From positions 9,300,001 to 9,364,000 of the forward strand of contig OZ287757.1 of the NCBI GenBank assembly GCA_965649765.1: a stretch of 64,000 bases of DNA, written 5' to 3'. Numbering within the stretch: the first letter of the stretch is position 1; each line of letters opens with the position of its first letter. Below are positions 12,001 through 34,797 of this stretch, piece by piece. The translations under genes and the position numbers were made by a program. The stretch is from Bispira polyomma. Lineage: Eukaryota. The notes under the pieces are model-generated. The model was not told where the DNA came from. It worked only from the letters and a program-made list of their open reading frames with translations, and did not search any database.

Positions 12001-15000
12001 TGATCTAAAATCCCATCAGTAACCCATGATTCTCTGATGAGATTTGAATTTGGTCTTGCGATTACCAGATCGATTATGTGATTGTGGATGTGGGTTGAAG
12101 TAGAGATAAACTGTGAGAACCCAAAAGTGTCGAGGAGGGTGTTGAAATCTTTTGTCGCAGTATTTTCTATGTCAAGCTTGATGTTGAAATCACCAAGGAT
12201 GATAGCTTCAAATGGGAGAAGGTTAAGGGTCTCAAGGAATTCGGAAAACTCTTGAGTAAAACTAGTTAAAGAAGGGATGGGTGGTCTGTAAAAGGAGGAA
12301 ACTAGGAATAAATGATAACCGTTTGAAATTTTGCATGAAATGTGTTCGAAAGACGAGTAGGACTGGTTTTTTAGAATATCACAGGGTATTTTTCACAAAA
12401 ATGCCAACTCCTCCCCCGCGTTTGTGCAACCTGGGGAACTGATGAAATTTGTAGCCCGGAGGAGTAATATCCGATAAAAAGGATGTCGTATCCCTACTGC
12501 TGAGCCACGTCTCGGAGACGGCAGCAACATCCAGGTCCTGGGCTATGACTAAGTCGATAGCCGCAGGTGCCTTATTCTGCAAGGAAAGGGCATTAAATGC
12601 ACCGATCTTAAGCAAGGATGCTGGGGGACCCGGATTAATGCTGACGTCCCCGCAGAGCGCAGTCAACAGAGGGATCCAGATACTGTTAACCCTGGGGTTT
12701 GGACGGCGGGTAATGTGAATTTGAAAAGCTAAAAAAGAAGTGTTCACCTTATCCAGGGAGGCTAGTAGAGATGGACCAAGTGCAAATTGGTCGAAAAAAG
12801 GTGTATTGGATGGAGAGCAGGCGCTCCATTTATGTAATCTGACACCGGCCAGAATAATACACGGGAGAAGTGTTAAACAGAACTTCCACATCTCAGATTT
12901 GAAGGAGCAGTAGCAAGAAAAAGAACCAAATATAAATCACAGCTAGACAGAATCAAAATGAAAGATGTAGTTTATTCTATGTAAAAACACTTGTAGTATA
13001 AAAATATGTGAACAAAGTCACATAGAATAAAAGGAAATGCGAAAATAGCAGAAGAAAAACGAATGCGTAAAACGGGAAATGTGGGCGATAATAACAGAAA
13101 GTTAAACAGCTAGGTGATAAATGGCAAGAAAAGCCCTATAAGACAGACAAAGTAAATATGATAAAAAGAACTGTAATTAATCAAAATATATAATGTTTTT
13201 CGCCATAACTCGAGGTACCAGTAAGAATTTTACAATTCGCGAAACGGAAATTTTAAAATGCTACTTAACTGGTGCACGCTAAACCACAATATGACTAAGT
13301 CGATATATCGTATTGATGATACACTAAACTCCAGCCTCAACTGTCTTGGGTTCGAAACTTAGTCCTGGCATGTTTGTGGGAAAGTTGACAAAGGACTTGC
13401 TGGAAAGTGTGTGGTTATTAGAGCAGAAAACCTTGACCAACTACCCTGCCTATTATTGTACACAAAACATGTTGAAAACCTTAAGTAAGTCAACATCATA
13501 CTATCATTGTATCACATCACAAATACAGACCATCAGAATATCATGCAATAATGTCAGCCTCTCGCGTTCAGATTCCTCAGAAGGGTCATCCATATAGTCA
13601 TCCAGTGCATTCTTGGCATCCAGCCAAGCATCTGAACAGAACATCTGGTATGCCTCCGATACATTCATGGGTCTGTTCTTGACGCATATATTTTCCAGGC
13701 TGCTCTCGTCGCGCGATACCTTCACTTCCATTTCTTTAGAGAGCCTGAAATGTCACAAAACATAATGACATGGTCAAGTTTTTACTTAAAAACATGTTTG
13801 ACTGAACTTATGCTAGACAAGCAATGCATCCTGTATTTAATATCAAATTCAGCTTTGTGTAACTTTTCACTGCCTTACGTTTTCAAAAGTGTTTGTTTTT
13901 TCATATTGATAATTATCACGGTATTCCCCTATTTCTAGTAATCATTTTCCATCAGTAACTAAGGCCAAGTGGTTAGATGCAATAATAGGCGTGTCATTGG
14001 CAGAGGAACATCAAAACAGGGCAGTTGGTCAAGGTTTTGTGTCTGCTTTACAATCACTGGTCTGTCACTTTGTGTGTTTTATCCTATTTGTTCCTTTATG
14101 TGAGAAGTTTTGTCAGGTACCTACAACAGGTCAGTGGCCTACATTGTTTCAGCAATGTTTTCTTTACTAAATCTGAACCTAAGCTGTTGAAAGCAACGTA
14201 AAACCCAACTAGTTCAAATTCACCAGTAACTGTGAATCCTCCTAACTGAAGACAGGCTACATGGTGGCACAATTTGTCCACCTTTCAAAGAATCTTTAGC
14301 CAATATGTATGTACCTGTAACCCCAGGTTTGTACAAAACAGGTCCTGTGTGTTCATTAGATGTGATAAGCAATGTAAATTAAGTATAAACAATTATTTCA
14401 ACATTTGCGACAAAGTGTAAACACCAGAGTTGAAATAGACAATCTTGACACAAAATCATTAGACAAGTTGTCACACTTCACCTCTCGCATTATTCAAGTT
14501 TGGCGATATTCACTAATCAAGAGCACCAGGCCTCAAAATCAAAGGTTAACCTCTCATTTGATAGGCAGTAGTAGTTTCACAGTTTCAAATGTATAACTCA
14601 TGTCTACTAGTATAACAAGCCTCTTGTTCAATATTATGAGCAGGGCCACTGTCTCGAAGTGGTTAGAAATGTCTGCTTCACTATCACTGGTTTCTCACTG
14701 ATGTGGGTTTCAATCCTGTTCGTTCTTTTATGTGGAAAGTTTGCGAGGAGGTGCCATAGATCGGTGGTTTACAAGTACTGGAGTCTTTCAGCAGTGAATG
14801 TGGTTGTCGTTGTATCACCTACACTGTTGGAAGTGACATAAAAACCCAACTAAACTAGTATTCAATACTTACAGCTCACTTAGCTACAGACCTAGACCTT
14901 TAAAAATTGCCAGGTTTTTGCATTTAAAATGTACCAAAGTTAAAGTTATGGGACAATTTGACACATACAGCAACAATTTCTAAGTTGAAGCGAAATAATC

Positions 15001-18000: not shown

Positions 18001-21000
18001 CAAGGAAAAAGGCATAACAGCCACAAAAACGAAAGTGCAACCATGAAAATAGCCAGCATGTGACTACAGGTGCTTTGTAATATTATACATCAATCCATAT
18101 ACAAGACACTGTCAGTTAGTTTTAAGTACATTGTTTTGCCTATGGTTTTCATCATATGGAAAAATGAGAATTCTACTATTTTTATAGTTATTACAACGGA
18201 AGAAAACATTAGGCTTGCAAATGTGTGGGAGTTACACTTGTATTTAGTCATTGATTTGTTTGACAAGTGGTTACTAAACACAATCATACTTTATTGTTGT
18301 GAAATGTATACAAACAACTTGAACTGAAATCCATATCTAAATTGTTATTACTTAGTGGGTCATCATTTTTTTTTAGTTAGATAACTGGAATTATTGGTCC
18401 CTATTGGCAAGTTTATAGTTAACAATACATCATTTCATTGGGAATTAATTTTACTATCCCCTGTAATTTTTTTTACCCAGAATATAGATAATACAACTCA
18501 ATTACATCAACAAAGACTGAGTGACCAAGAGGATCATAGTTTTGTTGTGTTAACATATATTTGACATAAACCGAGGCATTTCTTTATTACTGTGTCACCA
18601 AAGATGTAGTATAGGAAAAACATGTATTAGCATGTATTTAAGGGGGGAAATTGGAAAAAAGTACATACACTATGGGGGCAAATTGTGAAATATAAGGCTT
18701 TTGGATACTATATTTAGGTTTAGTTTGGAACCAATTTCAAATATACAACAGACACAAAAACACACCTACAAACTGAAACTAAAAAAAAAACTAGCGTAAA
18801 GATATCATTATAGTACACATTTTTTATTCATTTACTCGCATATATTAAAAATTATATTTTACACACTTGTCATTGAAATTTACACACCATTGAATTTATC
18901 CAAAAATAAAATCCCCACTTTCTGATAAAACAGCCCCTCCACCTCTTTTCACTTGTTAAATTATTACTTGAATTATTAGTTAACGATTATTTGAATGAAG
19001 TTGATGAGCTTTCCTGACCGGTTTCAGGTGTTCGCCTTTTACCAGCTACTGCTTTGTAAAATGACAACTTCTGATGGAAAGAATTCATATATACAACTGT
19101 TTAATACATGTACATTGTTTATAATACAAAATAAACTTCATGAAACTTTGTTATATAGCATAAGTATTTAAACAAGGAGGGTTACAGTATCTTTGCTGTT
19201 TGATTACTGTCCACCTGACTCGACCACCAATCTTTGGTCTCATGAAGTGACCCCCTTTGAAAAAAAAATTTATCATCCCTGAGGGTGATTATTAGGATAA
19301 ATACAGCATTTTTTAATTCATATTCTGTAACTTTACATGCTACAAACTAGTTGCCTGTCTTCTGACCACAACATGTTCAAAAGAAAATCTGGATCCTTTA
19401 TAAATGAAGTTCACCATTCAGCTGCTTCCTGACACATTCTCCAAGTTGGTCCAGCTCTGTGCTTCTCGAGATGTGCATGCTGTGGTCCTGACATCTGCGT
19501 TGATCAACTCCATTCAGGAGTGTCAATGCCTGGCAACTCGTTAGCCTCACAACAATCAGAAGGGTACTAAGTTCCGACTCTGCACCCTTTTGACCGATGT
19601 ATAGGTAAACATATGGACTAGGCCTCTTTGCATCTTTGCACCTGCTTGCATACCTCTCCAAAGCTGGCTTAAAGTCATTGTCCATGTCAAAGATCTTTGT
19701 TTTCTCAATCGAATCGTCGTGGCGCAGGAGCTTCAAGGTGGTCAGGGTGAACTCGGACGAATAATACAGGGATGTCTTGCACAGCCGGGTAGCATAGATG
19801 TTTCCACAGTGACACTCCAGTATGATGCCTCGGTGCATGTTCTTTAAGAGGTCATTGACACTAGGTAAGAGGTTATCGGGACAAAGCCCACTCGGCCACT
19901 GGGGCAGCTCCACAAGCTCACGATCCTTGGAGTCTGGGCCAAACAGAGCATCCTTGATAACGTCCGGGATTTCCTCTTCTATATTCCTCGGCACCACGGT
20001 GTATGTGATCCTACACCCCCGGGCTTGGGTCTTGATATGCTGGCTATTGATGATGTTATTTCTGTATATGATTTCCAAATACATTTCGGTGCCCGTTACG
20101 GAGATGCAGTCATGTGACATGACAGACTTGTCAAACGGCAGATGTGGATGACCTTCATCTGGTCTTATTGAATTAAGCTGCAGTGTTTTATAGGCCAATG
20201 GGTTGACAGTACTCGTACCCAACATTGCCATGTGGGGATGGTACCCAGAATCCACCTCTGCACTTTGAGAAACAGTAGAATATGGGCCAGCTGTACTTAT
20301 ATGGCAACTGGAAGACTGAGCAGGTATAAACGATGGACCTGCTGTACTGGCCGGGGTAATAAAGTTGTCAAACTCCATGTCTTCAATGCCACCATCTCTG
20401 TAATCAGCCCGTGCAGACTCCTGCGGCAGCTTGATGTTCCAGTTGTCACTGTTTGCTCCCTGGTAAAAGCACTTTCCCTCATGATCTACTACAGCTGTGA
20501 GCTGATTTTGTGGAGGCTGTCCGAAGGTGGGCCCACCTTTGTGGTGTTCCAATACTACACCAGGGCTGGTGTACTCATTCAGAAATGTTGGTACTGGGGC
20601 ATCTGATCCAAGAGCTGGTTGTACGGACTCCGGGTCGGGGGTTGAGGCAACCGGAGGTACAATTTTCTTTGGTTTTTGCCGCTTTAGAAACCTGTACACC
20701 TTGTAAGGATTTGGGTCACTCTTCCTGGTCATCTCTGGAATTTCCTGTATATCTGGGGCTTTATTCAGGGCGCAGCGTAAGTTGGTCTTCCACTTGGCAT
20801 AGGTGGGCGTGTCGACACCTTCACGGAATTTACCTGTATGGCATGCCCATTCCTTAAAGATCTGACTCTGTTCTGGCACCCAGTCCTGTTTCCCCCCATG
20901 TTTCCAGGGTACTTTAAAGATCTGTGCAGACCTATCCACCCATTGAAGGCCTGGGATGGTACCAGTATTTAACCTGCTTATCAACCAAGGTCTCAGCCTC

Positions 21001-22123
21001 TGTCTACTGTCTGAAGCTTCTTCTTCTGAAATATAAGAGAAACCCCATGTGTTCCAGTGTTCAAATTTAAAGCCTGTAAACTCTTGTCTTTGAACCAAAA
21101 CCTACCACTCAAAATACACTTGAAAAAGTTGATTTGGGACATAGTGGACCTCATACAGTGGCGTCTTTGTGTGCAAGCGGGGTGAAGATTATTAACAACT
21201 GATATTAATTGTAAATGATATAATTTGTGTAACATATTAAAGTAAAAGTAGATTTTGAGAAAGAAACAATGAACAAAATGTCTGCTTGTTTATCAAGCTG
21301 GAATTGTGTAATATATCACACAAATATTATCTTTTCTTTTCGTCAAACTTGATTAATCTTAAATCCTCCAATAACCACATACGACTTAGCCAGAAATAGA
21401 AAATTTTTGATTGTAGTCGAATCAGATTAAGAATAGATATTGAGTGTTCACTCTTAGCTCATGATTTGTTTTAAGAACATTTGCTCAGTTGAGACTTGAC
21501 CTGTGTTGGGATCTCACTAAAAGAAACTTTACTTGGACAAAAATTTGAAAAAAATCCTACTTCTTAACTTTAAACAACAAATTTATATTTTTTTAAGTCA
21601 TAATTAACGTTTTCGATGCGTAATGAAGTATTAAATGAAAAATAGTAAAGTGGTAAAATTTTATTCCGACTATAATCTTCACAGTATTTATAAAAATTTA
21701 AGTAAATTATTAATATGATTAACAGACAACTATTATCAGACATACCTGCATAACTGTGGCCAGTGATTGACATGTTGCTATTGCCCTGTACTTCCCAAGC
21801 CATTTCTGTGATTCTCTGGCTCAAATCGTCTCTAGTAGTTAAAATATATCCTTATATTCTTGTTCTCAGGATACCAAATTAATATTCTTCTTTAAAACTT
21901 TTTTTCGTCTTTCAAGAATCCTATCTGACTCGAAACAACTCTTTTAATGTAAAATGTGTAACTCCTAAAAACCTTCCAGTTATATACATCTACTGGTGAA
22001 AATAACTGTATTACCCCCTCCAACACTGGTGTAGTTTTAACAGTCAACGTATTTGACAGTACAATAGGTGTGAAACCGTGTTATAATTGACCTTCTTGTC
22101 ACTAGAACATATAAATACACTGA

Positions 22124-22156
<33 letters not shown>

Positions 22157-22932
22157 TCTCCACAGTTTTCCAGTTCAATGTCTGTTGTCGGAAAATACAA
22201 CGGGCGATATAGTAAATATTCAAACCAGTCCCATATAAGCTATCTTCCTCAATTAATTTACTTCCTTATAGTACATGTACATAGACCCACTGCTTGTTTT
22301 GTTATTTCAAACTGTGTTCTGAAACTGGTTTTAATATATCTGTCGTCCTTCGATTTTCCCAATACGGGGAAGTTTTGTTCCATCCGAAGATAGAATTCTG
22401 TCAGTTGTTTAATAACGGCACAGATGTATCATTTAGGTTTTCCTGGTATAAAGCGAAGATATGTTTACGCAGAGAATTCGCCGTCAGTATTTTCCCCGAA
22501 AACACTGGGAATTCCCCACTACGCGTATTTGTAGCTATAAATAGTAACACCTAAGCAGAGCCTCGTTTTCGCGGTTTAGGTACTCATACTACTGCGCCAT
22601 GAATATGTAAACAAAGAAGTACTTCGATAACGACACATGACTGAGCCGATCAATATACAAATAAATCTAAACCACAGTCGTCGTTTGAAAACCTTGGGAA
22701 TTTTATACTGAACATTTATTTCATGATATATTGGCATTCTTATTTGTACATATATAATATATGGTTTCATAAACAATTATGTCACACCCCACCCCCCACC
22801 CCCCACCTCGTTTATAATAATATGCTTTTATATGACTAGGGTAATCTAACGAAAAAAATTATACGGATCAATTTCGGTTTCACGTTCGCCGATATATTCT
22901 TCACATTACTAATAGTTTGTGGGAGAATAGAT

Positions 22933-22964
<32 letters not shown>

Positions 22965-25900
22965 CATGACAGTGCTCCCCATTAAGAAGTAATTATTTAT
23001 TGATTTATTGTGTGTATTGTTTGTTTTAATTTGTTTGGATTTTTTTCAATCTCAACATAGTACGGAAGCCTGTACAGGTCATACAAAAAATAAGAGATAT
23101 ATGTTTAAATTACAAAAAGGGCTCATATTGTAATTACCAGATATATCTCATAATCTAATCTAATCTAATCTAGTCATACTTTTATAGCGCTTAATCTTTG
23201 TACAACAAATTCTAAGGCGCAACAAACCCAAAACGTTAATCGCAAATCAAAAATAGTGGGCGGATGGAAGTCGTAACCAGGGAGACTACCGTAGATGGTT
23301 GCGACGGCTAAGGTGGAAAAGCCTGTTCAAAAAGATAGGCCTTCAGCTTACTCCTGAAAGAGGAGAAAGTTTGAGCTAGGCGAACATGATCAGGTAGGCT
23401 GTTCCAAATGAGGGGGCCATCATGAGCTAGGCAGTGATTGAACTGAACTTTGGATTTGTGGATGCGAGGGTCGAAAGTGGGAATGTTAAGGTATAATTTA
23501 TCAGGGTTACTGCGCCTAGTCCTGACTGAGCATGTATATTTGGATAGATGGGGGCTAAAATAAGTGGGTAATCCAGAATTTAGAAATTTATATATTATTG
23601 TTGCTGTTTTGAAAGCAACACGATATTTTATTGGGAGCCAGTGCAGTGACTTCAGTACAGGAGTAATGTGGGAAAATTTAGATGTTTTGGTCACAATACG
23701 TGCCAAGGAGTGTTGGATATTCTAAAGGCGTCTGAGATCACTACGAGATAAGGAACGGAACAGAGAGTTGCAGTAATCAAGCCTGCTGCTGACCAAAGCA
23801 TTGGCAACTGTGATTGCAGTGGATTTTGAAAGATAGCGTCGAATCCGCCTGAAATCACGCAGGTCAACAAAACATGATCTACACACCGATGTGACATAGT
23901 TCGAGAAGGAAAATTCAGAGTCGAACACCACACCCAGGTTTCGTACTTTGTCAGCTGGAAAAAACCTGCTGCCAAGAATGTCAAGTGGAAAACAGCTGGA
24001 CAATTTTTCCCGTTGCGACTTGGAGCCAAACAAAATAAACTCAGTCTTCTCAGGGTTCAGCTTGAGTTTATTTGCTGCCATCCAGTGTTGTACATCAACA
24101 AGGCAGTTCTGTAAGGAAGTGAAAGCTACCTGGGCAGAGTCAGGTGTAAGGTAGATGTACAGTTGGGTATCATCAGCATAGAAGTGAAAGTTTATGTTTT
24201 TGTATGCAGCAATAATCTTGCTGAGTGGAGTGGTGTACATGGAAAACAAAATGGGACCCAGGACGGAACCTTGGGGAACACCAAATTTTAACCATGTTGG
24301 GTCGGATAAGATATTGCCAATTTTGACTGATTGGAATCTATCAGATAAATATGCCGTGAACCACTTAAGCGCCATACCGTTGATACCGAACCAGGACGAT
24401 AGGCACTGTGATCAATAGTATCAAAGGCTGCTGACAGATCCAGCAGTACTAAGGCAGTAGGCATACCTTTGGATAAAGATGTATGAACATCATTTTTGAT
24501 GCAGAGAAGTGCAGTCTCAGTAGAATGACCACTTTTGTACGCTGACTGATACTTATTGGACAGATTGCTGACGTCAACATGTTGTTTGATCTGTAAGGCA
24601 ACCGCGCGTTCTACCAACTTAGAGATACAGCAAAGGCCTGAGGCAGGACGGTAATTTTTCAAGTCAGCCTTTGGAAGAGAAGGTTTTTTTTATTAAAGGA
24701 GTGACAATAGCCTTTTTAAAATAATCTGGAAAGACGCCATTTATCAAAGAGAGGTTGATATGTTTTGTGATTGAGGGCAATAAAATGTCAATACATTCTA
24801 TGACAAGGAATGTGGGCCACGGATCTAGCAAGCAAGATTTTACGGGTGATGCCAGTATAATTTTCCTGACTTCATCAACAGTTACTGTGGAGAAACAGTT
24901 GAAGACGGTTGGTGGAGCTGTTGGTAAAGGGGCATTTAGGGCAGCTAATGTAAAACCGTCACGGATTCTGGTAATTTTATCAGTGAAAAAAGTACTAAAA
25001 ATGTTTGCCAGTGATTTGCTATTGGAATTTTCGGGTAGTATAGTCTGTTTTTTGCGGTGGAGGGTGTTATTTAGTTTTTGCGAAAGTTTCTTCGGGTCAC
25101 CCTCGCTTTGAGATATCATGTTAGCATAGTAGGCACGTTTTGAGTCATTTATAGTGTTGTTGCACCGGGTGATCCATTCGCGTAGTCTAGATCTATTTGT
25201 AGCTGTTTTGTTTCGGCGCCATGTTCGTTCGGCTTGCCTGCGCAGCATCTTCATTTCACGATAATTACTGGTGATCCACTCAGGTGCTGTACTGTGTGTA
25301 TAGGTCAGTGGCATTATCAGCAGGAGACTTGGCGAAGGCCGTATCTGCCAACTCTCGTCTAAGGTCAGACATATTGATTTTTTGAAATTGCCGAAAAGTG
25401 ATTTGTGTGACATCAAAAGATGGTGGGGAGGGAGCATCAATTTCACAGGATATCGAAAAATGATCACTGATGCAACGAATGTTTTTTATGTTTTTGATAC
25501 CATTGAAATCAGTAGGAGTTAGCAAGCAATCTAGTGTATGCCCATGAATATGGGTAGGGAAGTTTATATGTTGGGTAAGATTGCAAGATTCCAGAACTGT
25601 GGAAAACCGATTACTATTTCCAGATGCGGTGTCTATGTGAATATTGAAATCCCCACAGAATACAGTAGGAGAGGGTAACGAGCAAGTAAACCCAACAAAA
25701 GACATGAATTCTTCGAAAAATGTAGTGAGATTTGAGCCAGGAGGCCGATAAACTGTTGCAAAATTTAAACACCGGTTTTTCCAGTGAGCAGAGACAAGGA
25801 TGAGCTCGAAAGATGTAAAACTTGGTGTAGCAACTAATCGACATTCATAGTTTTTCTTAATAAAAAATCCCACCCCCCCCCCACCCTGTTTACCTACACG

Positions 25901-28900
25901 AGGGGTATGGAATAGCTGAAAGTCAGCTGGGGTAAGTTCAGAGAGGAATGATGGAGTATCAGAACTCCTAATGTGTGTTTCTGTGATGCCGAAAATATCT
26001 ATGGAGGATGAGTCGATCAAATCGGCTATGACAGGGCTTTTATTCCGCAACGAGCGGACATTTCCAAATCCGAACTGAATTGGGCCAGGGTTACTCACAA
26101 TATCACCTGCCAGTAGGATAGTAATGAGTTTGAATGTTTTAGCCTTTGGTAGGTAATTGACTGGGCAGAATTTAGATCGAAAATAACAGTGTGTGTGGCG
26201 GGACCAGAAGTGTGGAACAGGATTGCAAGACAAATTAATGTCTTCCAGGTGGTATTGCATTGACAATGTATCAGATAATTTTAAGTCGTTGCGATAACAG
26301 AACGTAAGGAATGACAGGTACAAGATGGCAGCCCTAATGGCAAACATATTGAAAAAAAAAACAAAAAAACAATATATAGTGGTGATGGTCGATAATAGGG
26401 GATAGTTTCCAGTATAACCCCAAATTCAAAAAAAATAAAAAGTGTTGTACAAAGACTAAGCATAAAAATAGAAAAACAGTTTATATACTAACATGTGAGG
26501 ATGATTTTTAAGTAAAACAAGCCAAAACGTGGGTATAAAAAGACTAGATTAATTTAATTTTGACAATTACGAGCCGCCGCCGCCAAACCGGAAGTCTAAT
26601 TTCTCATAGTTACAAGATGTATCTCGTAATTTCAACATAGAGCTATCTCGTAATTTCAAGATAACCTTATGTTTAAATTAAGCGATAGCATTATGTTAAA
26701 ATTACAAGATTACCTTATGTTGAAATTATGAGATGTATCTTGTAATTACAACATATATCTTGTAATTACAGGATTAGCCATTCTTGTAATTTCAACATAA
26801 ATCTCGTAATTACGAGATAGCACTATCTTGTAATTACAAGATAGCATTATGTTGGAATTACAAGATAGTGTTATGTTGAAAATACGAGATAGCACTATCT
26901 TGCAATTACGAGATAATTTTTCTTGTATAACCTGTATAGGCCTCCGTAACATACAGACTTGCTAAGAAAGTAGTTTATGCTTATCCGCCATGCATGGAGT
27001 CATTATGATTCCTATATGTAAATTGGGCAAAGTGTTGACTGTGGAAATATAACTGTCAGCTCAAGTGTCTACTTTTAAAAAGTCATATGCGCTCTTATAA
27101 ACCTTCCTAATTTAACATACAGTAGATATTTGCATTGATATGTGAAGATGTTCCTGTAAATGTACAGGCGTATTAAAGCTTCAATAAGTTTATGTATAAC
27201 ATGACATATAGCAGTAATCCATTTATTCAATTATATGTAACTTTGATAATGAAAGGTAGTACATCTAATTTAGACCGCTTTGTTAATGTCATATGTCAAG
27301 ACTTCAAGAGATACAGTATCTTTGCCACCAATTTATTCAAACAGCTTTTGAATAATTGTTTTAAAAATATGTACAATGAAGAAGACTTATTAGTGAGGTC
27401 CTCAGTGGCCGAGTGGTTAGCAAGTTTGGCATCTAATCACAGGCTGTCACCTGTGTGTGGGTTCGCCTCCCACAAGTGACAAATGCTGTGGGCCTGGCTG
27501 TTGATCGAGGACGTAAAACCCTAAACATTGACTTTAGTTGTTGGGAACATAAAAGATTGAATGTTTATAAGAGATACCAGCTGTACCAATTCTAATGCAA
27601 GGGAAATCAATCATCTAATTATTTATATGTGTACTGTGTAAAGCAGATGATGTTGTTCTTTGTTGTTGTTTTTTTTTTTGTCTTCTTAATATAATGGTGT
27701 TGTATCAGTTTGGTGCCATGAGCACGATATACATGAATACATAAGTAAATTATGCTTGAGACAAAAGGACTTGAGGAAAGTCTAATCTCAACATGGGGTT
27801 TCTGTACTGGTCCTTTTGTATTTGTATTGTACAAGGACATTATGGCTTTTATCTGACCAGAGTCACGTTTACACAATCACTACGAAACCCCCCATTGACA
27901 TATAATATTTATTATACCTCGGCGGCGAATCCAGTGATCCTATTGGTTAAAATGCAATCACGTGATATAACATATTTCCCGATATGGCCCGGCAGTTGGG
28001 GGTCATATCACTGCAGCGGGCCATATCACTTGCAAAGTTTAACAAGCACCATGTGCGGTTATTTGTGTTTTCATTAAAGATTTATAGTTTAATACACAAT
28101 TAAACAACTGTAAATACATTATATTGAATTTACTGTTAAACGTCTTCTTCCACCGTGGTTAAATTGTTTATATACACATCACTGGAGTTAGGGGCGCTAC
28201 TACACCTAGCAGCTTCACGAAAATAGATGTCGGGACTAAAATTTCTGCACCCGGCCAATATGGCTTGAGGGCCGTCAGGCCCAAAAGCCATATTGTGCTG
28301 ACCAAGGGTGCATATATTCTAGTATGGCCCTCACAAACAGCTTATATTCTCTTTATTATACCGAAGCATTTTTGATTTTTAATATAGTTTTAATAAGGAA
28401 TTTTAGTCCCGATGTCTATTTTCCTCTAAATATGGTGCTGTGTGTCAGGATGCTATTTTTCACACTGACATGATATAATAAAAATTTATCAAGATTTATG
28501 ACTAAATGAGGGTGGGAAAAATCATAATATTGTCGTATAGACTTTTTTCACACAGATCATGCATAATTATATTTTCATGTCCAACATTTACAAGAATGTG
28601 TGGCCAACAACAACATTTTTTTTAAATTGACTTTTGTGTTCTTTTTAACGTTTCTCCTAAGTGTTAGTCTTATTTTCTGTTGTTAGTGAGCGTTTCCGGT
28701 ACTAGAAGCGAAAAAAATTTTTCTCAAATAATTGTATAGAAGCATAAAAATTGAAAATTGCCTGTTATACATTGGCTGGTCACCTCACCAAGTTGCCTGC
28801 ATGGAAACGCTCACTTATCCAACACTGTTTTGTGTAATTTGTATGTCATGCAGAACGATTGCATGGCATCTCTGTCCCTATTATTGGGCCTCTCCACGAT

Positions 28901-31039
28901 CAGTCTTGATAGTGGAACAGGGTCGAATCATGATCAAGTGGGAGCTTTACTTTATTAATATTACCAAGCGAGTTGTTATCTGACACAGCCTGATATTGAT
29001 CTTGTTCGGCCCAGCCTTGATGGAAATACATAACACCTTATGGATTGGTTGGAAGCAATTGACCCAATTGAACTGAGGGGTGTCAGTTTTATATTATCTG
29101 GCGATTATAACACACAGCCTGATATCGATACTTTGCTGGAAATAATATGCAAGATTGAATTAGTTGGATTCGTTGAAAGCAATCACCCAGGCCAAACTAA
29201 GGGGTGTCAGTCAGTCACACTGTAGGCTGATGTCTTTTTTTAAAGACAATTCTTGTTTATTCTTAAGTGAAACAATTCTATAACAAAACTGAGTGGGTGT
29301 TTGTTGCATGCTATACCCACATACTATGTATGTGGTCATTTCGAAACTAGATTTCAACAGATAAATATAGAAAGTGATTTATCACAATGTATGTTATTTG
29401 AATGCATGGTGATGTTTGTTATAGCCATTATTTTACTACATTAGTTCATATGACTAGTAATAATTTACTAATGTATTATAATGGTAACGTTATTAACCAT
29501 CAGTTATTATGTGATGGCATTTTAAAAGATTTTATCCTTGCGTCTTTACTTAAACTTGCACATCTACAAGGAGGCATTTATATTTTAAATATATTACCTC
29601 AAACCTAGAATCATATTTCATACAACTTATACTAAAGTCCTTACTTTATGGATGCTCATTGTTACTTTTAGCTTTTGACCTTTACCTTAACTGCATCACA
29701 CAAGTAAGGGGGGGGGGGCACTCGGTGACATAGTGGTTAATACAAATGCCTCCCACCTCTGAGGTCGTGTTTCGAATCTTGTTGGCTACAGCTTTATGTT
29801 GGAAATTTGGCAGTTAGTTGAAAGTTGGCCGATGCCAGATCATTTAGACTGCAGAATATTGACCAACTAGTATGCACTGCTTTCCCCCACCAGTAAAACT
29901 AACCTGTTGTGATACGACTTATATACAATGTGCTGAAAGCAACATTAAACCCCAAATCCATCAATCAATTAAGCGTTCTAGCCAGATACTGTTGTAATAT
30001 ACCTAACAAGTCCTCAATTTATTTTTATTGAAATAGAGTATGAATGAGTACATTGTGTGATGTCCTGTCAAAACCATCGCCTGGCATGGCCAGTTACACA
30101 CGGCAAGGAAATTTCAGAGGTGGTCAGACCAGGTATTAAATACAGTTGATATACGATTACTGCAGGTACCATGTGATATGTATATTGTCTAGAACCACCT
30201 TTCCATACCACCAATGAGAGACTTTAGGTGTGACCAGTAATATCTAAACTAGTGCAAGTTTACAGCCTCACTAAAAAAGTAACTTCTATCTGTGTGGGAA
30301 GAGCTTCCATCCCTTTTTGGTGACATCCTCGTGGAATAAACTTACACAATTGTATTGTAAATGAGTAGGCAATATGGTGTGGTCATACGTTGCCTAAGGA
30401 TGTGATGCCACCAACAAACCTAAGCAGGAGTGTAACCAGGGACCCTCCGATCACCGGACAAACTCCACCCGCCACCCCCCTACTTGGAGTTGAAATGGGG
30501 ACCCTTCTAGTCGACAGACCATCTCCCTAACCACTAGGCCACAGGAAACTCTGTGTATCAATAAAATAAAATAACAGACAACAAGCTATCCTATACATAA
30601 AACAGTTGCTGTTATATGGAGAAAAACTGTAACCCACTAACCTGAGTGACAGGTCTTTGCAATCCGCCTGTGATTTCTGTAGTTTTTGCCCAAGATCCAA
30701 GTTCTCCTGGCGAAGTTCTTCCTTTTCCTTTTCAAGCTTTTCCAAATCCAGTTTACTTTTCTTCTGGCTAGAGCTGTCTTCCACGGAAGAAAGGCTACGT
30801 TTTTTGCCACGCAAATCATCTTCCGAAGCCGATGACAAAGAGGACAAAGCCCCGCCCACTACCACTACTTTCTCTACGTCACGATCACCGTCGCACTTCT
30901 GGCTTGAGGCATCATACCACGTTTCGTCGGCTCCGTCACTGATAACTTGCTGTATCTGTGCCGATTCCCTGCTTATTATTTCGGCAGACCTTTTGATTTT
31001 ATTTTTAATATCCTGAACTGAACGCTGTTGATCATCCAT
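3072..31039 (-). CDS. Mieap/SPATA18-like (mitochondria-eating protein C-terminal domain) coiled-coil protein, paralogue A, ~437 aa; coding exons 31039-30642, 13744-13531, 8879-8781, 6856-6725, 4347-4024, 3218-3072
   Basis: All junctions GT-AG and phase compatible (2,0,0,0,0), 1314-nt uninterrupted frame. Motifs R|LSKEM..LENICVKNRPMNVSEAYQMFCSDAWLDA and ACSIVWKMVLQRPQM..YVHPVLYHGDKVMAKGRI resemble the MIEAP domain family; exon structure mirrors paralogue B. The join of exon 30642 to 13744 is inferred. Confidence 0.75.
8380..8613 (-). mobile_element. Second copy of the L2-tail SINE-like element
   Basis: Near-identical to 9930-10173 in reverse; flanked by gtggtat TSD (8373-8379/8614-8620); same 5' start GGCACCC. 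Confidence 0.8.
9337..13250 (-). mobile_element. Near full-length L2-clade non-LTR retrotransposon (APE + RT), disrupted; in intron 2 of gene A
   Basis: APE motifs (SETWL, GGGVGIF), RT motifs ([37 protein letters not shown]), C-terminal SRLDYCNSL..LHWLP..AYPP*, (AAT)n tail at ~9337-9355; in-frame TAG at 10556-10558, frameshifts, and an insertion at 9846-10173. 5' boundary approximate. Confidence 0.9.
9846..10173 (+). mobile_element. Short non-autonomous retroelement (SINE-like) with L2-derived 3' tail, inserted antisense in the L2; 5' head tandemly duplicated
   Basis: tacat TSD (9841-9845/10174-10178), (ATT)n tail, last ~110 bp homologous to the host L2 3' UTR (9340-9456); second copy at 8380-8613. 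Confidence 0.8.
14645..15615 (+). repeat. Two decayed SINE copies (14645-14855, 15385-15615); relatives at ~29715-29970, 44270-44480 and 51165-51385 (-)
   Basis: Shared tRNA-like head, atgtgg(g)aaa core and ctgttg..gtgac.taaaaccc 3' end. Confidence 0.55.
19398..21803 (-). CDS. IRF: Interferon regulatory factor (IAD1-type, IRF4/8-supergroup-like), ~561 aa; coding exons 21803-21746 and 21025-19398
   Basis: Trp-repeat DBD (RLRPWL..GLQWVD..FKVPWKH..IFKEWA..AKWKTNLRCALNK) and C-terminal IAD1/SMAD-FHA-like domain (GCRI..LLKNMHRGI..IYATRLC..KIFD). The TTG start in the ORF track is intronic: strong acceptor tttctcttatatttcag ends at 21026; the upstream exon MAWEVQGNSNMSITGHSYA-G|gtatg (acceptor at 21832) is phase-1 compatible. 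Confidence 0.95.
22491..22517. promoter_or_regulatory. Composite GAS (STAT) + NF-kB site upstream of IRF gene
   Basis: TTTCCCCGAAA at 22491-22501 (TTCN3GAA, same sequence as the mammalian IRF1 GAS core) followed 5 bp later by palindromic GGGAATTCCC(C) at 22507-22517, ~0.7 kb upstream of the IRF ATG exon in a CpG-richer patch. Confidence 0.65.
22870..22888. promoter_or_regulatory. ISRE-like element upstream of IRF gene
   Basis: AATTTCGGTTTCACGTTCG contains TTTCNNTTTC (GAAACCGAAA on the - strand) plus a partial third half-site. Confidence 0.5.
23061..26948. mobile_element. MITE with ~30-bp TIRs (TACGG..CCGTA) and internal palindromic minisatellite, split by the L2 insertion; IS3EU-like termini
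   Basis: tacggaagcctgtacaggtcatacaa (23061) is the inverted repeat of ttgtataacctgtataggcctccgta (to 26948); near-perfect 6-bp TSD acatag/acatac; repeated atctcgtaattacgagat-type units at 23130-23150 and 26597-26915. Confidence 0.7.
23150..26596 (-). mobile_element. Full-length L2-clade LINE (single ORF: leader, 2A-like motif, APE, RT), frameshifted
   Basis: ORF pieces 26347-25280, 25467-24664, 24662-24288, 24375-23722, 23706-23308 carry ITETH, YRPPG, GDFNIH, LLDLSAAFDTIDH, GVPQGSVLGP, YADDTQ, LHWLP, AFPP*; (GATTA)n tail at ~23150-23172. Confidence 0.92.
27398..27535 (+). mobile_element. Older tRNA-derived SINE (related copy at 47405-47550, - strand)
   Basis: A box TGGCCGAGTGG, B-box-like GGTTCGCCTCC, 3' gctgttga..ggacgtaaaacccta. 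Confidence 0.65.
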
Positions 31040-31273
31040 TGTTTTCGTTTGTTTAGCAACGTGCAAAAGTAGGGTTTATTTAAAATATGTGATATCTCAA
31101 ATTTGAACGAATACCTTATATATTATACTCCTTATTTACTTTTTTGATACAGCTTTAAGTACCAAAGCTGTCTAATGCTTTGGTATTGATACACCAGTGT
31201 ATATAGATACCCATGTGTACTTGTATTTCATCGATGCAGTCGACGTAGTATTGAACGGCGGCAAAATTAACAC

Positions 31274-31292
31274 GAAATCGAAAGTGAAAGTA
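31274..31292. promoter_or_regulatory. ISRE/IRF-E upstream of Mieap-like gene A
   Basis: GAAATCGAAAGTGAAAGTA = three GAAA half-sites at 6-bp spacing, ~235 bp upstream of the ATG at 31039. Confidence 0.65.
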
Positions 31293-32645: not shown

Positions 32646-34797
32646 AGCCTCGGTGGTGATGCCATTTTGGGAGATATTTCTTCAGTTATGATACAATGTA
32701 TATAAGGTGACATAAGGTAAGGGAGGGTAAATTTCATTAGCTAACTGATATGAACAGGCCTTTATACAGTGTATCCAGGTAGTACGACAGTTAGACATGA
32801 CTGACATCAGGTTATATAAGGTAATAGAAGGTTGGAAAGGGTAAGGCCTCAGAAGAGTTATGGCAATAAATGGTAACATCAGCTTATTCCTCTATGGTGG
32901 GAGATGGTAATCGGTTCTTCCACCACTGGGGGCGGTGCTGCAACCAGTATTTTAATGCGTGCCATTTAGAACATTGGCTCTTTCATGATTCAGCCATTAA
33001 TGTGTTCACATCATAGATGTACAACAATAAATAGACAGCCAGCTCTTCATGTTGCATTGCTACAGGGCATTATGCAGTTGAATTATATAAACCAGAGAAA
33101 CAATGTAGATATTTACAAGTACTTAAGAAGGAGGCACGTTAGAAGACAGAACCTACTGACTGCAAAATTTGGCCTCTATGAAAACCTCCTGCAGGAGTTC
33201 GAGCTTAAAGACCTGACTGTCTTTAAGAACTTTATCCGTATGGAGCCACAGCTGTTTTGTGAGCTTTTTGATCAAGTGGGGCCCCTGCTACATGCAACGG
33301 CAAAACTGTTAGGTAGTCGATGGAATGTCTACCACACTGTCGGAGCCCTAGATGGAAAGCATGTGGTTCATCAAGTGTCCCTCGAGCTTAGGGTCTCTCT
33401 ATTACAATTACAAGGAATTTTATTCTATTATCCTGCTGGCTCTGGTGGATGATGACTACAACTTGTTGTGGGCGGATGTCGGCAGTAATGGTTGTTGCTT
33501 AGATGTCCAGGTGTTTAATGACTTTGATCTGAAGGAGGTTAAAGAATATTGTACCATTGGTTTCCCAGCTGCTGATCCATTACCAGGTGATAACAAGAAC
33601 ATACCTAAAAAGAAGAAAGCCATTCTTAGCCAGACATCTCACAGATGCAGAACGCATATTTAACTACAGACTATCAAGGGCAAGGCATACAGTTAAAAAT
33701 GCTTTTGGGATTTTTTCAATCAAATTCCGATGCATCTTAACCACAATGCAACAAGTTCCACATACTGTCACCACCATTGTTCTTGCTTGTGTGGTATTGC
33801 ATAACATCATGTGGAAGAGGTACCCTATAGTCCACAGTGGCCTTCAGGATGACGAACACTCTGTTGTACCTGGGCCTGTACTCATGGCAGATTAATGGAA
33901 CGCATCAGGGGAAAATTGTGCTAGAAAACATACTCAAACAGCCCTGCTGGAAAAAAGCCTGAAATAATTACCAAATGGAAGCAATCTGTTCATTCCATAT
34001 TTATTACTTATACATTACATGTTAAATACATTTCTTACACGTCAGGTGCATCTCAACAGCCTTGTCTTCTGAGAGCTTGGCCCTTTTTTGTGTTTCTATA
34101 ATCCTTCAGGCCCTTTACATTGAGACAGGGGCTGTCTTGGACCCAGTCAATGAGCTTTTCCTTCTCATCATCTGCTAAGGGTTATTGCAAAAATAATAAT
34201 ATAGTACATTAGTTTCAATAATCCAAAATCACACACTTAACCTTTGATCCTGTGAAATGAAATGATTGTGATATGCGTTTGTATGTTATACATAGCCCAA
34301 ACTGTTACTGCCATATATGGTCACTACCTAGCACCTGTGCTTCACCACCTGTCACCTGGTGTCACCGACACACAACCGCCTCTATAACTCATCTCACCAC
34401 ATTGTTACCGCATCAATAGCCTCAGACTGTAGCTTAATGGCGTCTCCTTACCGTCTCTTACCACCTTTTACTATCTATCACTGTACTCTATCATCAGAAA
34501 ATATACCATTAACGGTTACAGATGGTTCAATGCAGCTAGAGGTGATTATATAGGGACTATTGGGCAACAGGCTGATGCGGTCAATCAACCAAAAAGGCAG
34601 TTGAATTTGAACCGTCCCTGAAGAGCCGAAATTTCATGTTAAAACCATCACCTGACACGGCTGGTTATCAATGATTAGAGATTTTTGAGTGGTACGATCT
34701 GATATTGATATAGTCGATATATGATTACCGCAGTTACCAGGTGATATGAATACTGTCCCGAGCCACCTTTCCATACCAACAATGTGAAACTGGGGCT
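32646..34797 (+). mobile_element. Decayed PIF/Harbinger DNA transposon with HARBI1-like DDE transposase pseudogene (~33000-33900)
   Basis: GALDGKH, YYNYKEFYSIILLALVD, WADVGSNG, FNYRLSRARHTVKNAFG, ACVVLHN split over three frames; short imperfect TIR (agcctcggt / actggggct) and TTA on both flanks (boundaries tentative). Confidence 0.8.

What the first reader, a model, noticed from the sequence alone, without database searches (positions are those of the whole stretch)
22491..22517. Vertebrate IRF1-style GAS + kB promoter module in an invertebrate IAD1-type IRF
Seen: TTTCCCCGAAA and a perfect GGGAATTCCC only 5 bp apart. Established: the mammalian IRF1 promoter uses a TTTCCCCGAAA GAS and a kB site synergistically, and IRF8 is also GAS-driven. 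Inference: ancient or convergent STAT+Rel wiring of IRF induction, implying a cytokine-JAK/STAT input.
Basis: partly seen in the sequence, partly recalled or inferred. Interest (0 to 1): 0.75.

Follow-up and report, generated by a model that had tools for sequence, protein, structure and literature searches.

The report
STAT-plus-NF-kB site pair upstream of IRF
A textbook STAT site and a perfect NF-kB site sit side by side upstream of a bivalve-like interferon-regulatory-factor gene, and the same pair recurs upstream of a second, very different IRF gene in the same genome, so it is probably a real immune-inducible switch, though no RNA data yet show where transcription starts.

Summary
TTTCCCCGAAA lies at 22491-22501 and GGGAATTCCC at 22507-22516, 5 bp apart.

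The IRF gene (DBD + IAD1) is on the minus strand. The pair lies about 690 bp upstream of its probable ATG, at 21803.

Each motif alone occurs at chance frequency. Tight kB+GAS pairs are not enriched genome-wide: 16 against 17 in the control.

The region is single-copy and the exact pair is unique in the 1.035-Gb genome.

The main new result concerns a second IRF gene on another contig. Its IAD is only 29% identical to this one. It carries GGAATTCCCC, 1 bp, then TTCCGGGAA, 2.26 kb upstream of its ATG.

Both genes show the same order on the gene strand: kB, GAS, then a TATA-like element 35-39 bp on. The flanks cannot be aligned. I estimate the chance of this second hit at about 0.007.

The genome encodes one STAT locus and two Rel-homology loci.

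No RNA run was available, so the transcription start, factor binding and inducibility are all inferred. No orthologous promoter could be fetched.

Verdict: a probable composite STAT/Rel-responsive promoter module. It is a new invertebrate instance of a known vertebrate IRF1-type logic. Whether it is ancestral or convergent is unresolved. The scan's earlier notes on it are from this same window only.

The parts
22491..22501 (.). GAS-type STAT site TTTCCCCGAAA. The core TTCCCCGAA at 22492-22500 is an N3-spaced palindromic half-site pair.
   Evidence: The same 11-mer is used as the GAS in STAT1 EMSA probes (PMC3507856, passage seen).
22507..22517 (.). Palindromic kB site GGGAATTCCC. It reads GGGGAATTCCC on the minus strand.
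   Evidence: It matches GGGRNWYYCC on both strands.
22445..22453 (-). TATA-like element on the gene side of the pair. It reads CTTTATACC on the minus strand and TATAAAG on the plus strand, and starts 40 bp after the GAS core.
   Evidence: The paralogue has TATATATAA at the equivalent place, starting 36 bp after its GAS core.
22417..22427 (-). Inferred transcription start zone, about 25-35 bp downstream of the gene-side TATA-like element. There is a CA at 22425-22424.
   Evidence: Inference only. No RNA evidence.
22537..22544 (+). Second TATA-like element (TATAAATA) on the far side of the kB site, pointing away from the IRF gene.
   Evidence: It leaves the orientation of the module ambiguous. 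No plus-strand ORF of 80 aa or more that looks like a gene lies nearby.
21746..21803 (-). Probable ATG-bearing exon of the IRF gene (MAWEVQGNSNMSITGHSYA, phase 1, donor GT at 21745-21744). A possible acceptor AG lies at 21833-21832.
   Evidence: The frame joins exon 2 at 21025. This is my reading of the sequence and was not confirmed by RNA.
19398..21025 (-). Main IRF exon. It encodes the DNA-binding domain (PF00605, E 2.6e-38) and IAD1 (PF10401, E 1.1e-16), through to the stop codon.

Best explanation
The GAS/kB pair is a composite, signal-integrating cis-regulatory element of the minus-strand IRF gene, most likely its proximal promoter.

Read on the gene strand, the order is: kB site (22517-22507), 5 bp, GAS (22501-22491), 39 bp, TATA-like element (22453-22445). 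That predicts a start near 22420, a short non-coding leader, and then the ATG exon at 21803.

A Rel/NF-kB dimer would respond to pathogen sensing. A tyrosine-phosphorylated STAT dimer would respond to a cytokine receptor and JAK. The two would bind side by side and cooperate to switch the IRF gene on.

A second, highly diverged IRF gene in the same genome uses the same arrangement.

Shown here:
- the motifs, and their rarity as a pair;
- single-copy status;
- recurrence with the same order, strand and TATA spacing at a paralogue;
- presence of STAT and RHD genes.

Inferred: factor binding, the start site, inducibility and synergy.
For: 1. Motifs and spacing are as stated.

2. The exact pair is unique in 1.035 Gb, against 0 for the control. 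The 501-bp region has one match in the genome, so it is not a repeat.

3. The a-priori relaxed pattern TTCNNNGAA N1-12 GGGRNWYYCC has 410 hits genome-wide. One is at G000:C1:23690624-23690643. This is 2,258 bp upstream of the ATG of another IRF gene, on the gene's strand (PF00605 and PF10401 confirmed). At that hit density, the expected number within 3 kb upstream of the six other IRF loci is about 0.007 (my calculation).

4. Of the 16 genome-wide matches to GGAATTCCC N0-8 TTCNNNGAA, 2 are these IRF sites, and both are on the gene strand.

5. TATAWA at +21 to +55 after the GAS is present at 2 of the 2 IRF-linked sites and at 1 of the 14 others. The background is 8.3% of 35-bp windows.

6. The two promoters share nothing alignable apart from the motifs. 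240 of 500 whole-region shuffles, 932 of 1000 downstream-flank shuffles and 651 of 1000 upstream-flank shuffles reach the observed score. The paralogue's region is also single-copy. The recurrence is therefore not a recent duplication or a shared repeat.

7. The paralogue's ATG exon is preceded by a strong polypyrimidine-AG acceptor. This fits a distal non-coding first exon.

8. The genome has one STAT_bind locus and two RHD loci.

9. In humans, GAS and NF-kB sites in the IRF1 promoter are described as critical for induction by IFN-gamma and TNF (PMC8264192, passages seen).
Against: - No RNA run holds the stretch. The three runs that were laid are DNA-like contigs with no joints. The start site and exon 1 are therefore unverified.
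- The pair is about 690 bp from the ATG. A second TATA-like element (TATAAG, 21856-21851) lies just upstream of the ATG, so the pair could be a distal element rather than the core promoter.
- The gene-side TATA reads best on the opposite strand, and another TATA lies on the far side (22537-22544).
- Each motif alone is at chance frequency.
- The composite class is not enriched genome-wide: 16 against 17 in the control. For the relaxed pattern, 410 against 208, but roughly 73 of the first 100 listed hits are one repeat family, by my eye count.
- Five of the seven IRF loci show no such pair in up to 9.5 kb upstream.
- Among 80 IRF-encoding metagenome contigs (330 kb) there was only one GAS-kB pair within 30 bp. 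It lies inside the gene, in a GC-rich contig that I left alone.
- No orthologous promoter could be examined.
Confidence: 0.6

Rival explanations
1. Chance juxtaposition. Two consensus-like words happen to lie together in AT-rich non-coding DNA and have no regulatory role. The second IRF-linked pair is a coincidence.
For: Single motifs occur at chance frequency. Tight composites are as frequent as in the reversed control, 16 against 17. At least one other composite lies in a coding exon on the opposite strand (L112/L125). Five other IRF loci lack it.
Against: The expected number of a-priori composites within 3 kb upstream of the other six IRF loci is about 0.007, yet one is there. It has the same order, the same strand relative to the gene and a TATA at the same distance. 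Both copies use near-optimal sites rather than degenerate ones.
Confidence: 0.2
2. The element is functional but serves something other than the proximal IRF promoter. It could be a distal or intronic enhancer or an alternative promoter of the surrounding Mieap-like host gene. Alternatively it could be the promoter of an unannotated plus-strand transcript that starts after TATAAATA (22537-22544).
For: A consensus TATAAATA lies 20 bp beyond the kB site on the plus strand. A MIEAP-domain exon lies further along the minus strand at 3976-4287. Earlier notes place the IRF gene inside that gene's long intron (not verified by me). A TATA-like TATAAG also lies next to the IRF ATG.
Against: No gene-like plus-strand ORF lies within several kb. 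The next feature is a minus-strand LINE-like element at 23308-26347. The paralogue has its TATA only on the gene side, and there is no ORF of 70 aa or more that looks like a gene on its far side. The nearest gene to both copies is an IRF.
Confidence: 0.12
3. The element is functional but is read by other factors. Examples are ETS-family or BCL6-like proteins on the TTCC/GGAA cores, or NFAT or another RHD protein on GGAATTCC. In that case it does not report a JAK/STAT plus Rel input.
For: The TTCC/GGAA cores are shared by several factor families (established knowledge, recalled). PF00554 also covers NFAT-type RHD proteins, and the two RHD loci were not typed further. No binding data exist.
Against: Both copies keep the full palindromic N3 GAS (TTCCCCGAA, TTCCGGGAA) and a full 10-11-bp kB consensus, not just GGAA cores. 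The genome has a STAT with a STAT_bind domain.
Confidence: 0.1

Closest known systems
Human/mouse IRF1 promoter: GAS plus NF-kB sites, including the 'composite GAS/kappaB promoter element' of Pine 1997 (Nucleic Acids Res 25:4346)
   Same: An IRF gene carries a STAT-type GAS and a kB site close together upstream of its start. PMC8264192 (passages) states that both elements are critical for IRF1 induction by IFN-gamma and TNF. The 11-mer here equals the GAS used in STAT1 EMSA probes (PMC3507856). That this 11-mer is the native IRF1 GAS is my recollection.
   Different: The Pine paper itself is not held; I saw only its title, in a reference list. Here the target is an IAD1-type IRF of a lineage-specific invertebrate clade, not an IRF1 orthologue. 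The sites are separate (5 bp and 1 bp apart) and lie 35-39 bp before a TATA-like element. Nothing has been tested experimentally.
Vertebrate IRF8 (ICSBP) promoter with an IFN-gamma-responsive GAS-type element
   Same: An IAD1-type IRF induced through a STAT site.
   Different: As far as I recall, no adjacent perfect kB site forms a tight composite there. Orthology with the present gene is not supported.
Bivalve IRFs studied so far (Crassostrea gigas CgIRF1, CgIRF2, CgIRF8)
   Same: These are mollusc IRF genes induced by poly(I:C) or virus, and JAK/STAT components are present in the genome (PMC5557890, passages seen; PMC8218723, passages seen).
   Different: Those papers test what the IRF proteins activate: human IFN-beta/ISRE reporters and the CgIFNLP promoter. 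In the passages I saw, they do not test what drives the IRF genes. My searches found no open-access description of a GAS+kB module in an invertebrate IRF promoter. Subscription journals and supplements were not searchable.
Insect stress/immune genes that need both JAK/STAT and a Rel factor (e.g. Drosophila Turandot A) - recalled, not checked here
   Same: Invertebrate precedent for STAT and Rel inputs converging on one promoter. Invertebrate STAT prefers N3 sites such as TTCCCGGAA (recalled).
   Different: The target genes are different, and insects have no IRF family.

Membership tests
Composite GAS/kB cytokine-and-pathogen-inducible promoter element (vertebrate IRF1 type) | STAT-type GAS, TTCN3GAA palindrome | tested here: met
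   TTCCCCGAA at 22492-22500 within TTTCCCCGAAA. The paralogue has TTCCGGGAA.
Composite GAS/kB cytokine-and-pathogen-inducible promoter element (vertebrate IRF1 type) | kB site fitting GGGRNWYYCC | tested here: met
   GGGAATTCCC at 22507-22516 fits on both strands. The paralogue has GGGGAATTCC.
Composite GAS/kB cytokine-and-pathogen-inducible promoter element (vertebrate IRF1 type) | The two sites are adjacent (within about one helical turn), so bound factors can cooperate | tested here: met
   The spacer is 5 bp here and 1 bp in the paralogue.
Composite GAS/kB cytokine-and-pathogen-inducible promoter element (vertebrate IRF1 type) | Lies in the proximal promoter, shortly upstream of the gene's transcription start | tested here: inconclusive
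   It is upstream of the gene on the gene strand, with a TATA-like element 39 bp on. However, there is no RNA run, no joints in the laid contigs, and the ATG is about 690 bp away.
Composite GAS/kB cytokine-and-pathogen-inducible promoter element (vertebrate IRF1 type) | Bound by STAT and Rel/NF-kB proteins; induction lost when the sites are mutated | not testable with these tools
   Only the presence of one STAT_bind locus and two RHD loci was shown.
Composite GAS/kB cytokine-and-pathogen-inducible promoter element (vertebrate IRF1 type) | Conserved in related promoters | tested here: inconclusive
   It is present at 2 of 7 IRF loci in this genome, with the same architecture. No related genome is available (one search states that there are none). 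The 80 metagenome IRF contigs gave no upstream pair, but they are short and not orthologous.
IAD1-type IRF (IRF3-9 group) | N-terminal IRF DNA-binding domain plus C-terminal IAD1 (Pfam IRF-3 domain) | tested here: met
   PF00605 at E 2.6e-38 (residues 34-137) and PF10401 at E 1.1e-16 (residues 337-529).
Orthologue of vertebrate IRF1 | Groups with IRF1/2 and lacks IAD1 | tested here: not met
   It has IAD1. In a quick tree of 28 rows it sits in a clade (SH-aLRT 99) with three other IRFs of this genome and two unnamed proteins, apart from the named mollusc IRF8-like proteins. No IRF1/2 reference was in that tree.
Transposable-element-borne regulatory module | The surrounding sequence is repeated in the genome | tested here: not met
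   Window 22150-22650 has 1 match in 1.035 Gb. The paralogue's 451-bp region also has 1 match.

The most novel reading that the evidence does not exclude
Bivalves run an interferon-like feed-forward loop. A still-unidentified cytokine signals through JAK and the single STAT, and pathogen sensing signals through Rel. The two inputs converge on a tight kB-GAS-TATA cassette that switches on lineage-specific IAD-type IRF genes. In this reading, the STAT+NF-kB control of IRF induction is an ancestral bilaterian wiring kept since before the protostome-deuterostome split, not a vertebrate invention. The two cassettes found here would give a defined DNA bait for finding the upstream cytokine pathway.
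Probability: 0.15. Interest if true: 0.75.

Novelty: new member of a known kind. Interest (0 to 1): 0.5.

Why it matters
Molluscs have IRFs, a STAT, Rel proteins and virus-inducible 'interferon-stimulated-like' genes, but no recognisable interferon. What induces their IRF genes is largely untested.

A compact composite STAT/Rel element that recurs at two diverged IRF genes gives a concrete, mutable 27-bp target. It can be used to test three things:
- whether JAK/STAT signalling feeds into IRF expression in a lophotrochozoan;
- whether NF-kB and STAT synergise there as they do at mammalian IRF1;
- whether that logic is ancestral or convergent.

It also provides a candidate inducible promoter for mollusc cell work. 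If the sites prove inert, the case becomes a useful caution about reading consensus motifs in AT-rich genomes.

Tried and rejected
Expression evidence:
- The look-up of sequencing runs found no RNA holder. It found only three runs from one study, which hold 0.99 of the words including intron and intergenic DNA.
- Read laying on 19300-22900 gave contigs identical to the window. They break at the (AT)n run at 22113-22161, and there were no joints and no variants. This gave no information on the start site, splicing or polymorphism.

Orthologous promoters:
- The best protein relative is P0001 (69% identity, unnamed).
- G000 has no relatives in the genome search.
- A metagenome scan with a 5-sequence IRF alignment (A1) gave 80 IRF-encoding contigs. 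None has a GAS within 30 bp of a kB site upstream of the match. The only pair is in L071, inside the match, in a contig of GC 0.56. That contig may be vertebrate. I did not look at it further or use it.

Repeat origin: rejected.

Shared descent visible in the flanks: rejected, since there is no alignment above shuffles.

A wider 'regulon':
- I followed the 14 non-IRF tight composites only as far as printing their contexts and scanning ORFs at two of them.
- Four of the 14 are one repeat.
- The L112 site lies in a plus-strand coding-looking ORF.
- Nothing immune-related was seen, and I stopped there.

GAS-like cluster between the head-to-head IRF pair on C1 (L017 5814-5848): it sits in low-complexity AT-rich sequence with no kB site, so I judged it uninformative.

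Literature:
- Pine 1997 is not held.
- One search failed on term syntax and was not repeated in that form.
- Six searches found no open-access report of a GAS+kB module in an invertebrate IRF promoter.
- Subscription journals and supplementary files could hold one.

Spliced model: I searched only exon 2. Exon 1 (19 codons) is too short to search.

Tree: I used 24 of the 49 hits plus 4 translations from G000. I left out 25 hits: extra isoforms, unnamed Logan rows, further birds, and zinc-finger-containing amphioxus proteins. The method was 'quick', with SH-aLRT support only. The rows for IRF-B and IRF-C have very long branches, so their position inside the clade is unsafe.

Full report
**What is there**

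One search shows, on the plus strand:
- TTTCCCCGAAA at 22491-22501;
- ACACT at 22502-22506;
- GGGAATTCCC at 22507-22516, followed by a further C at 22517.

The first element contains the N3-spaced palindrome TTCCCCGAA. The second is a perfect palindromic kB 10-mer that fits GGGRNWYYCC on both strands.

**The gene**

The only IRF coding sequence nearby is on the minus strand. It is an open frame at 21098-19398, with an IRF DNA-binding domain (PF00605, E 2.6e-38) and an IAD1 (PF10401, E 1.1e-16).

The frame has no ATG ahead of the DBD. A good acceptor (tttcag) ends at 21026, so the large exon is 21025-19398. An in-phase ATG exon can be read at 21803-21746, with donor GT at 21745.

This exon model is my reading. 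It agrees with coordinates in the scan's earlier notes on this window and is unconfirmed by RNA.

On the gene strand the order is therefore:
- kB (22517-22507);
- 5 bp;
- GAS (22501-22491);
- 39 bp;
- CTTTATACC (22453-22445, which reads TATAAAG on the plus strand);
- about 640 bp further on, the ATG.

**Is it more than chance?**

Taken singly, no. TTCNNNGAA occurs 20 times in the window against 20.15 expected. GGGRNWYYCC occurs 4 times against 3.04 expected, and three of those matches are this site.

As a class, tight composites are also not enriched:
- GGAATTCCC N0-8 TTCNNNGAA gives 16 hits in the 1.035-Gb genome against 17 for the reversed control.
- The relaxed pattern TTCNNNGAA N1-12 GGGRNWYYCC gives 410 hits against 208. 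By my eye count, about 73 of the first 100 listed belong to one repeat family.

What is rare is this particular pair. TTCCCCGAA N1-12 GGGAATTCCC occurs once in the genome, and the control 0 times. A 501-bp stretch around it has a single genomic match, so it is not part of a repeat.

**The key result: a second copy at another IRF gene**

One hit of the relaxed, a-priori pattern lies at G000:C1:23690624-23690643 and reads TTCCCGGAAGGGGGAATTCC. The Pfam IRF search of the genome places an IRF DBD exon at C1:23688127-23688360 on the minus strand. I fetched the stretch as L014 and read it.

This gene, which I call IRF-B, has:
- an ATG/DBD exon starting at L014 3367 (PF00605, E 1.5e-13);
- an IAD exon (PF10401, E 1.1e-8).

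On its own (minus) strand, upstream, it has:
- GGAATTCCCC (5644-5635);
- 1 bp;
- TTCCGGGAA (5633-5625);
- 35 bp;
- TATATATAA (5589-5581).

This cassette lies 2,258 bp before the ATG. The ATG exon is preceded by a long polypyrimidine tract and an AG, which fits a distal non-coding first exon.

The order, the strand relative to the gene and the distance to a TATA-like element all match those of the window's gene.

With 410 hits in 1.035 Gb, the expected number within 3 kb upstream of the six other IRF loci is about 0.007 (my calculation). With the tighter pattern, which I derived after seeing both sites, it is about 1e-4.

TATAWA at +21 to +55 after the GAS is present at both IRF-linked sites (+40 and +36). 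It is present at 1 of the other 14 tight composites. The background is 8.3% of 35-bp windows.

**The two cassettes are not copies of one another**

- Local alignment of 241 bp around each finds only the shared GGAATTCCC. 240 of 500 shuffles score as high.
- The downstream flanks are below shuffle level: 932 of 1000 shuffles reach the observed score. So are the upstream flanks: 651 of 1000.
- The IRF-B region is single-copy.
- The proteins are distant: 29% identity over the IAD and 43% over 53 residues of the DBD.

**Context in the genome**

PF00605 finds 11 exon matches, which I group into seven IRF loci. PF10401 finds four IAD-type genes.

I fetched up to 9.5 kb upstream of the five other loci. 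None has a GAS within 12 bp of a kB site. So 2 of 7 IRF loci carry the module.

A quick maximum-likelihood tree was built from 28 rows: 24 of the 49 hits, plus four translations from this genome. It puts the four IAD-type IRFs of this genome, P0001 and P0002 in one clade (SH-aLRT 99), apart from the named mollusc 'IRF8-like' proteins. IRF-B and IRF-C have very long branches, and the program warns about them.

The gene is thus not an IRF1 orthologue, and the resemblance to IRF1 is one of regulatory logic.

The best named relatives of the protein are bivalve and other mollusc IRFs. The best hit overall is an unnamed protein at 69% identity.

The genome has one locus with a STAT DNA-binding domain and two loci with Rel-homology DNA-binding domains. 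I did not type the latter as Rel, NF-kB or NFAT.

**What could not be shown**

- No RNA run holds the stretch.
- The three runs laid are contigs identical to the window. They span intron and intergenic DNA, break at the (AT)n tract, and show no joints and no variants.
- The start site, the first exon, inducibility and any population constraint therefore remain untested.
- No related genome is available, and the tool that would fetch the P0001 locus is closed.
- A metagenome scan returned 80 IRF-encoding contigs, mostly short. None has a GAS-kB pair upstream of the match. The single pair found lies inside the match in a GC-rich contig, which I left alone because it may be vertebrate. These contigs are not orthologous and have little upstream sequence, so this is a weak negative.

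**Ambiguities in the anatomy**

- The gene-side TATA of the window's gene reads as a consensus TATAAAG on the opposite strand.
- A second TATAAATA lies 20 bp beyond the kB site on the plus strand (22537-22544).
- A TATAAG lies about 50 bp before the ATG (21856-21851).

The pair could therefore be a core-promoter element, a -650 upstream element or a bidirectional element.

Against a plus-strand target, the next feature on that side is a minus-strand LINE-like element (23308-26347), and no gene-like plus-strand ORF follows. IRF-B has its TATA on the gene side only, and no gene-like ORF on the far side.

**Mechanism proposed**

A Rel/NF-kB dimer on the palindromic kB site and a STAT dimer on the adjacent GAS act together just upstream of a TATA-directed start. 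They would induce the IRF gene when pathogen sensing and a cytokine/JAK signal coincide.

- Shown: the sequence elements, their rarity as a pair, their recurrence with conserved architecture, and the presence of the candidate factors' genes.
- Inferred: binding, synergy, the start site and inducibility.

I put this at about 0.6. I put pure chance at about 0.2. The remainder is split between another target transcript and other binding factors.

**Comparison with what is known**

PMC8264192 states that GAS and NF-kB elements of the human IRF1 promoter are well defined and critical for induction by IFN-gamma and TNF (passages).

[quoted passage not shown] The paper itself is not held.

The 11-mer here is the GAS used in STAT1 EMSA probes (PMC3507856, passage). 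That it is the native IRF1 GAS is my recollection.

In oysters, IRF genes are induced by poly(I:C) and virus, and the proteins activate ISRE-type reporters (PMC5557890, passages). An oyster receptor is reported to activate ISRE, STAT3 and GAS reporters (PMC8218723, passage).

In the passages and listings I saw, nobody describes what drives a mollusc IRF gene, or a GAS+kB module in an invertebrate IRF promoter. Subscription journals and supplementary files were outside reach.

**Verdict**

This is a new, untested invertebrate instance of a known regulatory logic. Whether it is ancestral or convergent is open. Interest is moderate (0.5).

Noticed in passing
G000:C1:23685000-23694000 (L014), minus strand: A second IAD-type IRF gene ('IRF-B') with a very divergent DBD (PF00605 E 1.5e-13, PF10401 E 1.1e-8). 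It has its own kB-GAS-TATA cassette at L014 5644-5581. Its branch in the tree is extremely long.
   Followed up: yes
G000:C1:21602893-21611871 (L017, L124, L006): Two further IAD-type IRF genes lie head to head, about 3.6 kb apart. One is a single 583-codon open frame holding both DBD and IAD. A cluster of GAS-like words (N3 and N4 spacing) sits at L017 5814-5848 in AT-rich, low-complexity sequence between them, with no kB site.
   Followed up: partly
window 31273-31290, minus strand: ACTTTCACTTTCGATTTC, an ISRE/IRF-E-like run of GAAA repeats on the other strand. It lies about 235 bp upstream of the ATG of the coiled-coil ORF at 31039-30527. Earlier notes make that ORF exon 1 of a Mieap-like gene whose long intron would hold the IRF gene.
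   Followed up: partly
window 3976-4287, minus strand: An exon-like ORF matching the MIEAP (mitochondria-eating protein) domain, PF16026, E 5.6e-7. The pieces at 30530-31039 and 13507-13731 matched no Pfam family.
   Followed up: partly
window 23308-26347 and 9352-12891, minus strand: Two LINE-like retroelement remnants. They have endonuclease-like and reverse-transcriptase-like ORFs, with a YADD motif visible in the translations. Frames are broken into several ORFs. Not checked against Pfam.
   Followed up: no
window 32985-33895, plus strand: Overlapping ORFs whose translations look like a Harbinger/PIF-type DDE transposase, with frameshifts. Read from the translations only.
   Followed up: no
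window 22113-22161 and 22933-22974: An (AT)n microsatellite at which the contigs of all three public runs break, and an uninterrupted run of about 42 G. At 22869 one X1 contig continues with 126 unrelated letters, which may be an alternative haplotype or an insertion.
   Followed up: no
genome-wide (listing): One dispersed repeat family carries a TTCTAGGAA word followed 12 bp later by GGGGCACTCC. It accounts for roughly three quarters of the first 100 listed matches to the relaxed GAS-kB pattern. A smaller family (GGAATTCCCATATTTCCATGAA) gives 4 of the 16 tight composites.
   Followed up: partly
G000:C3:56779362-56779383 (L112/L125): A kB+GAS composite (GGAATTCCCACTGTTCCTGGAA) that lies inside a plus-strand coding-looking ORF, so it is most likely a by-product of coding sequence.
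   Followed up: partly
L071 (metagenome contig, GC 0.56): The only GAS-kB pair (gap 10 bp) among the 80 IRF-encoding metagenome contigs. It lies inside the IRF match. The contig may be vertebrate and was deliberately not examined further.
   Followed up: no
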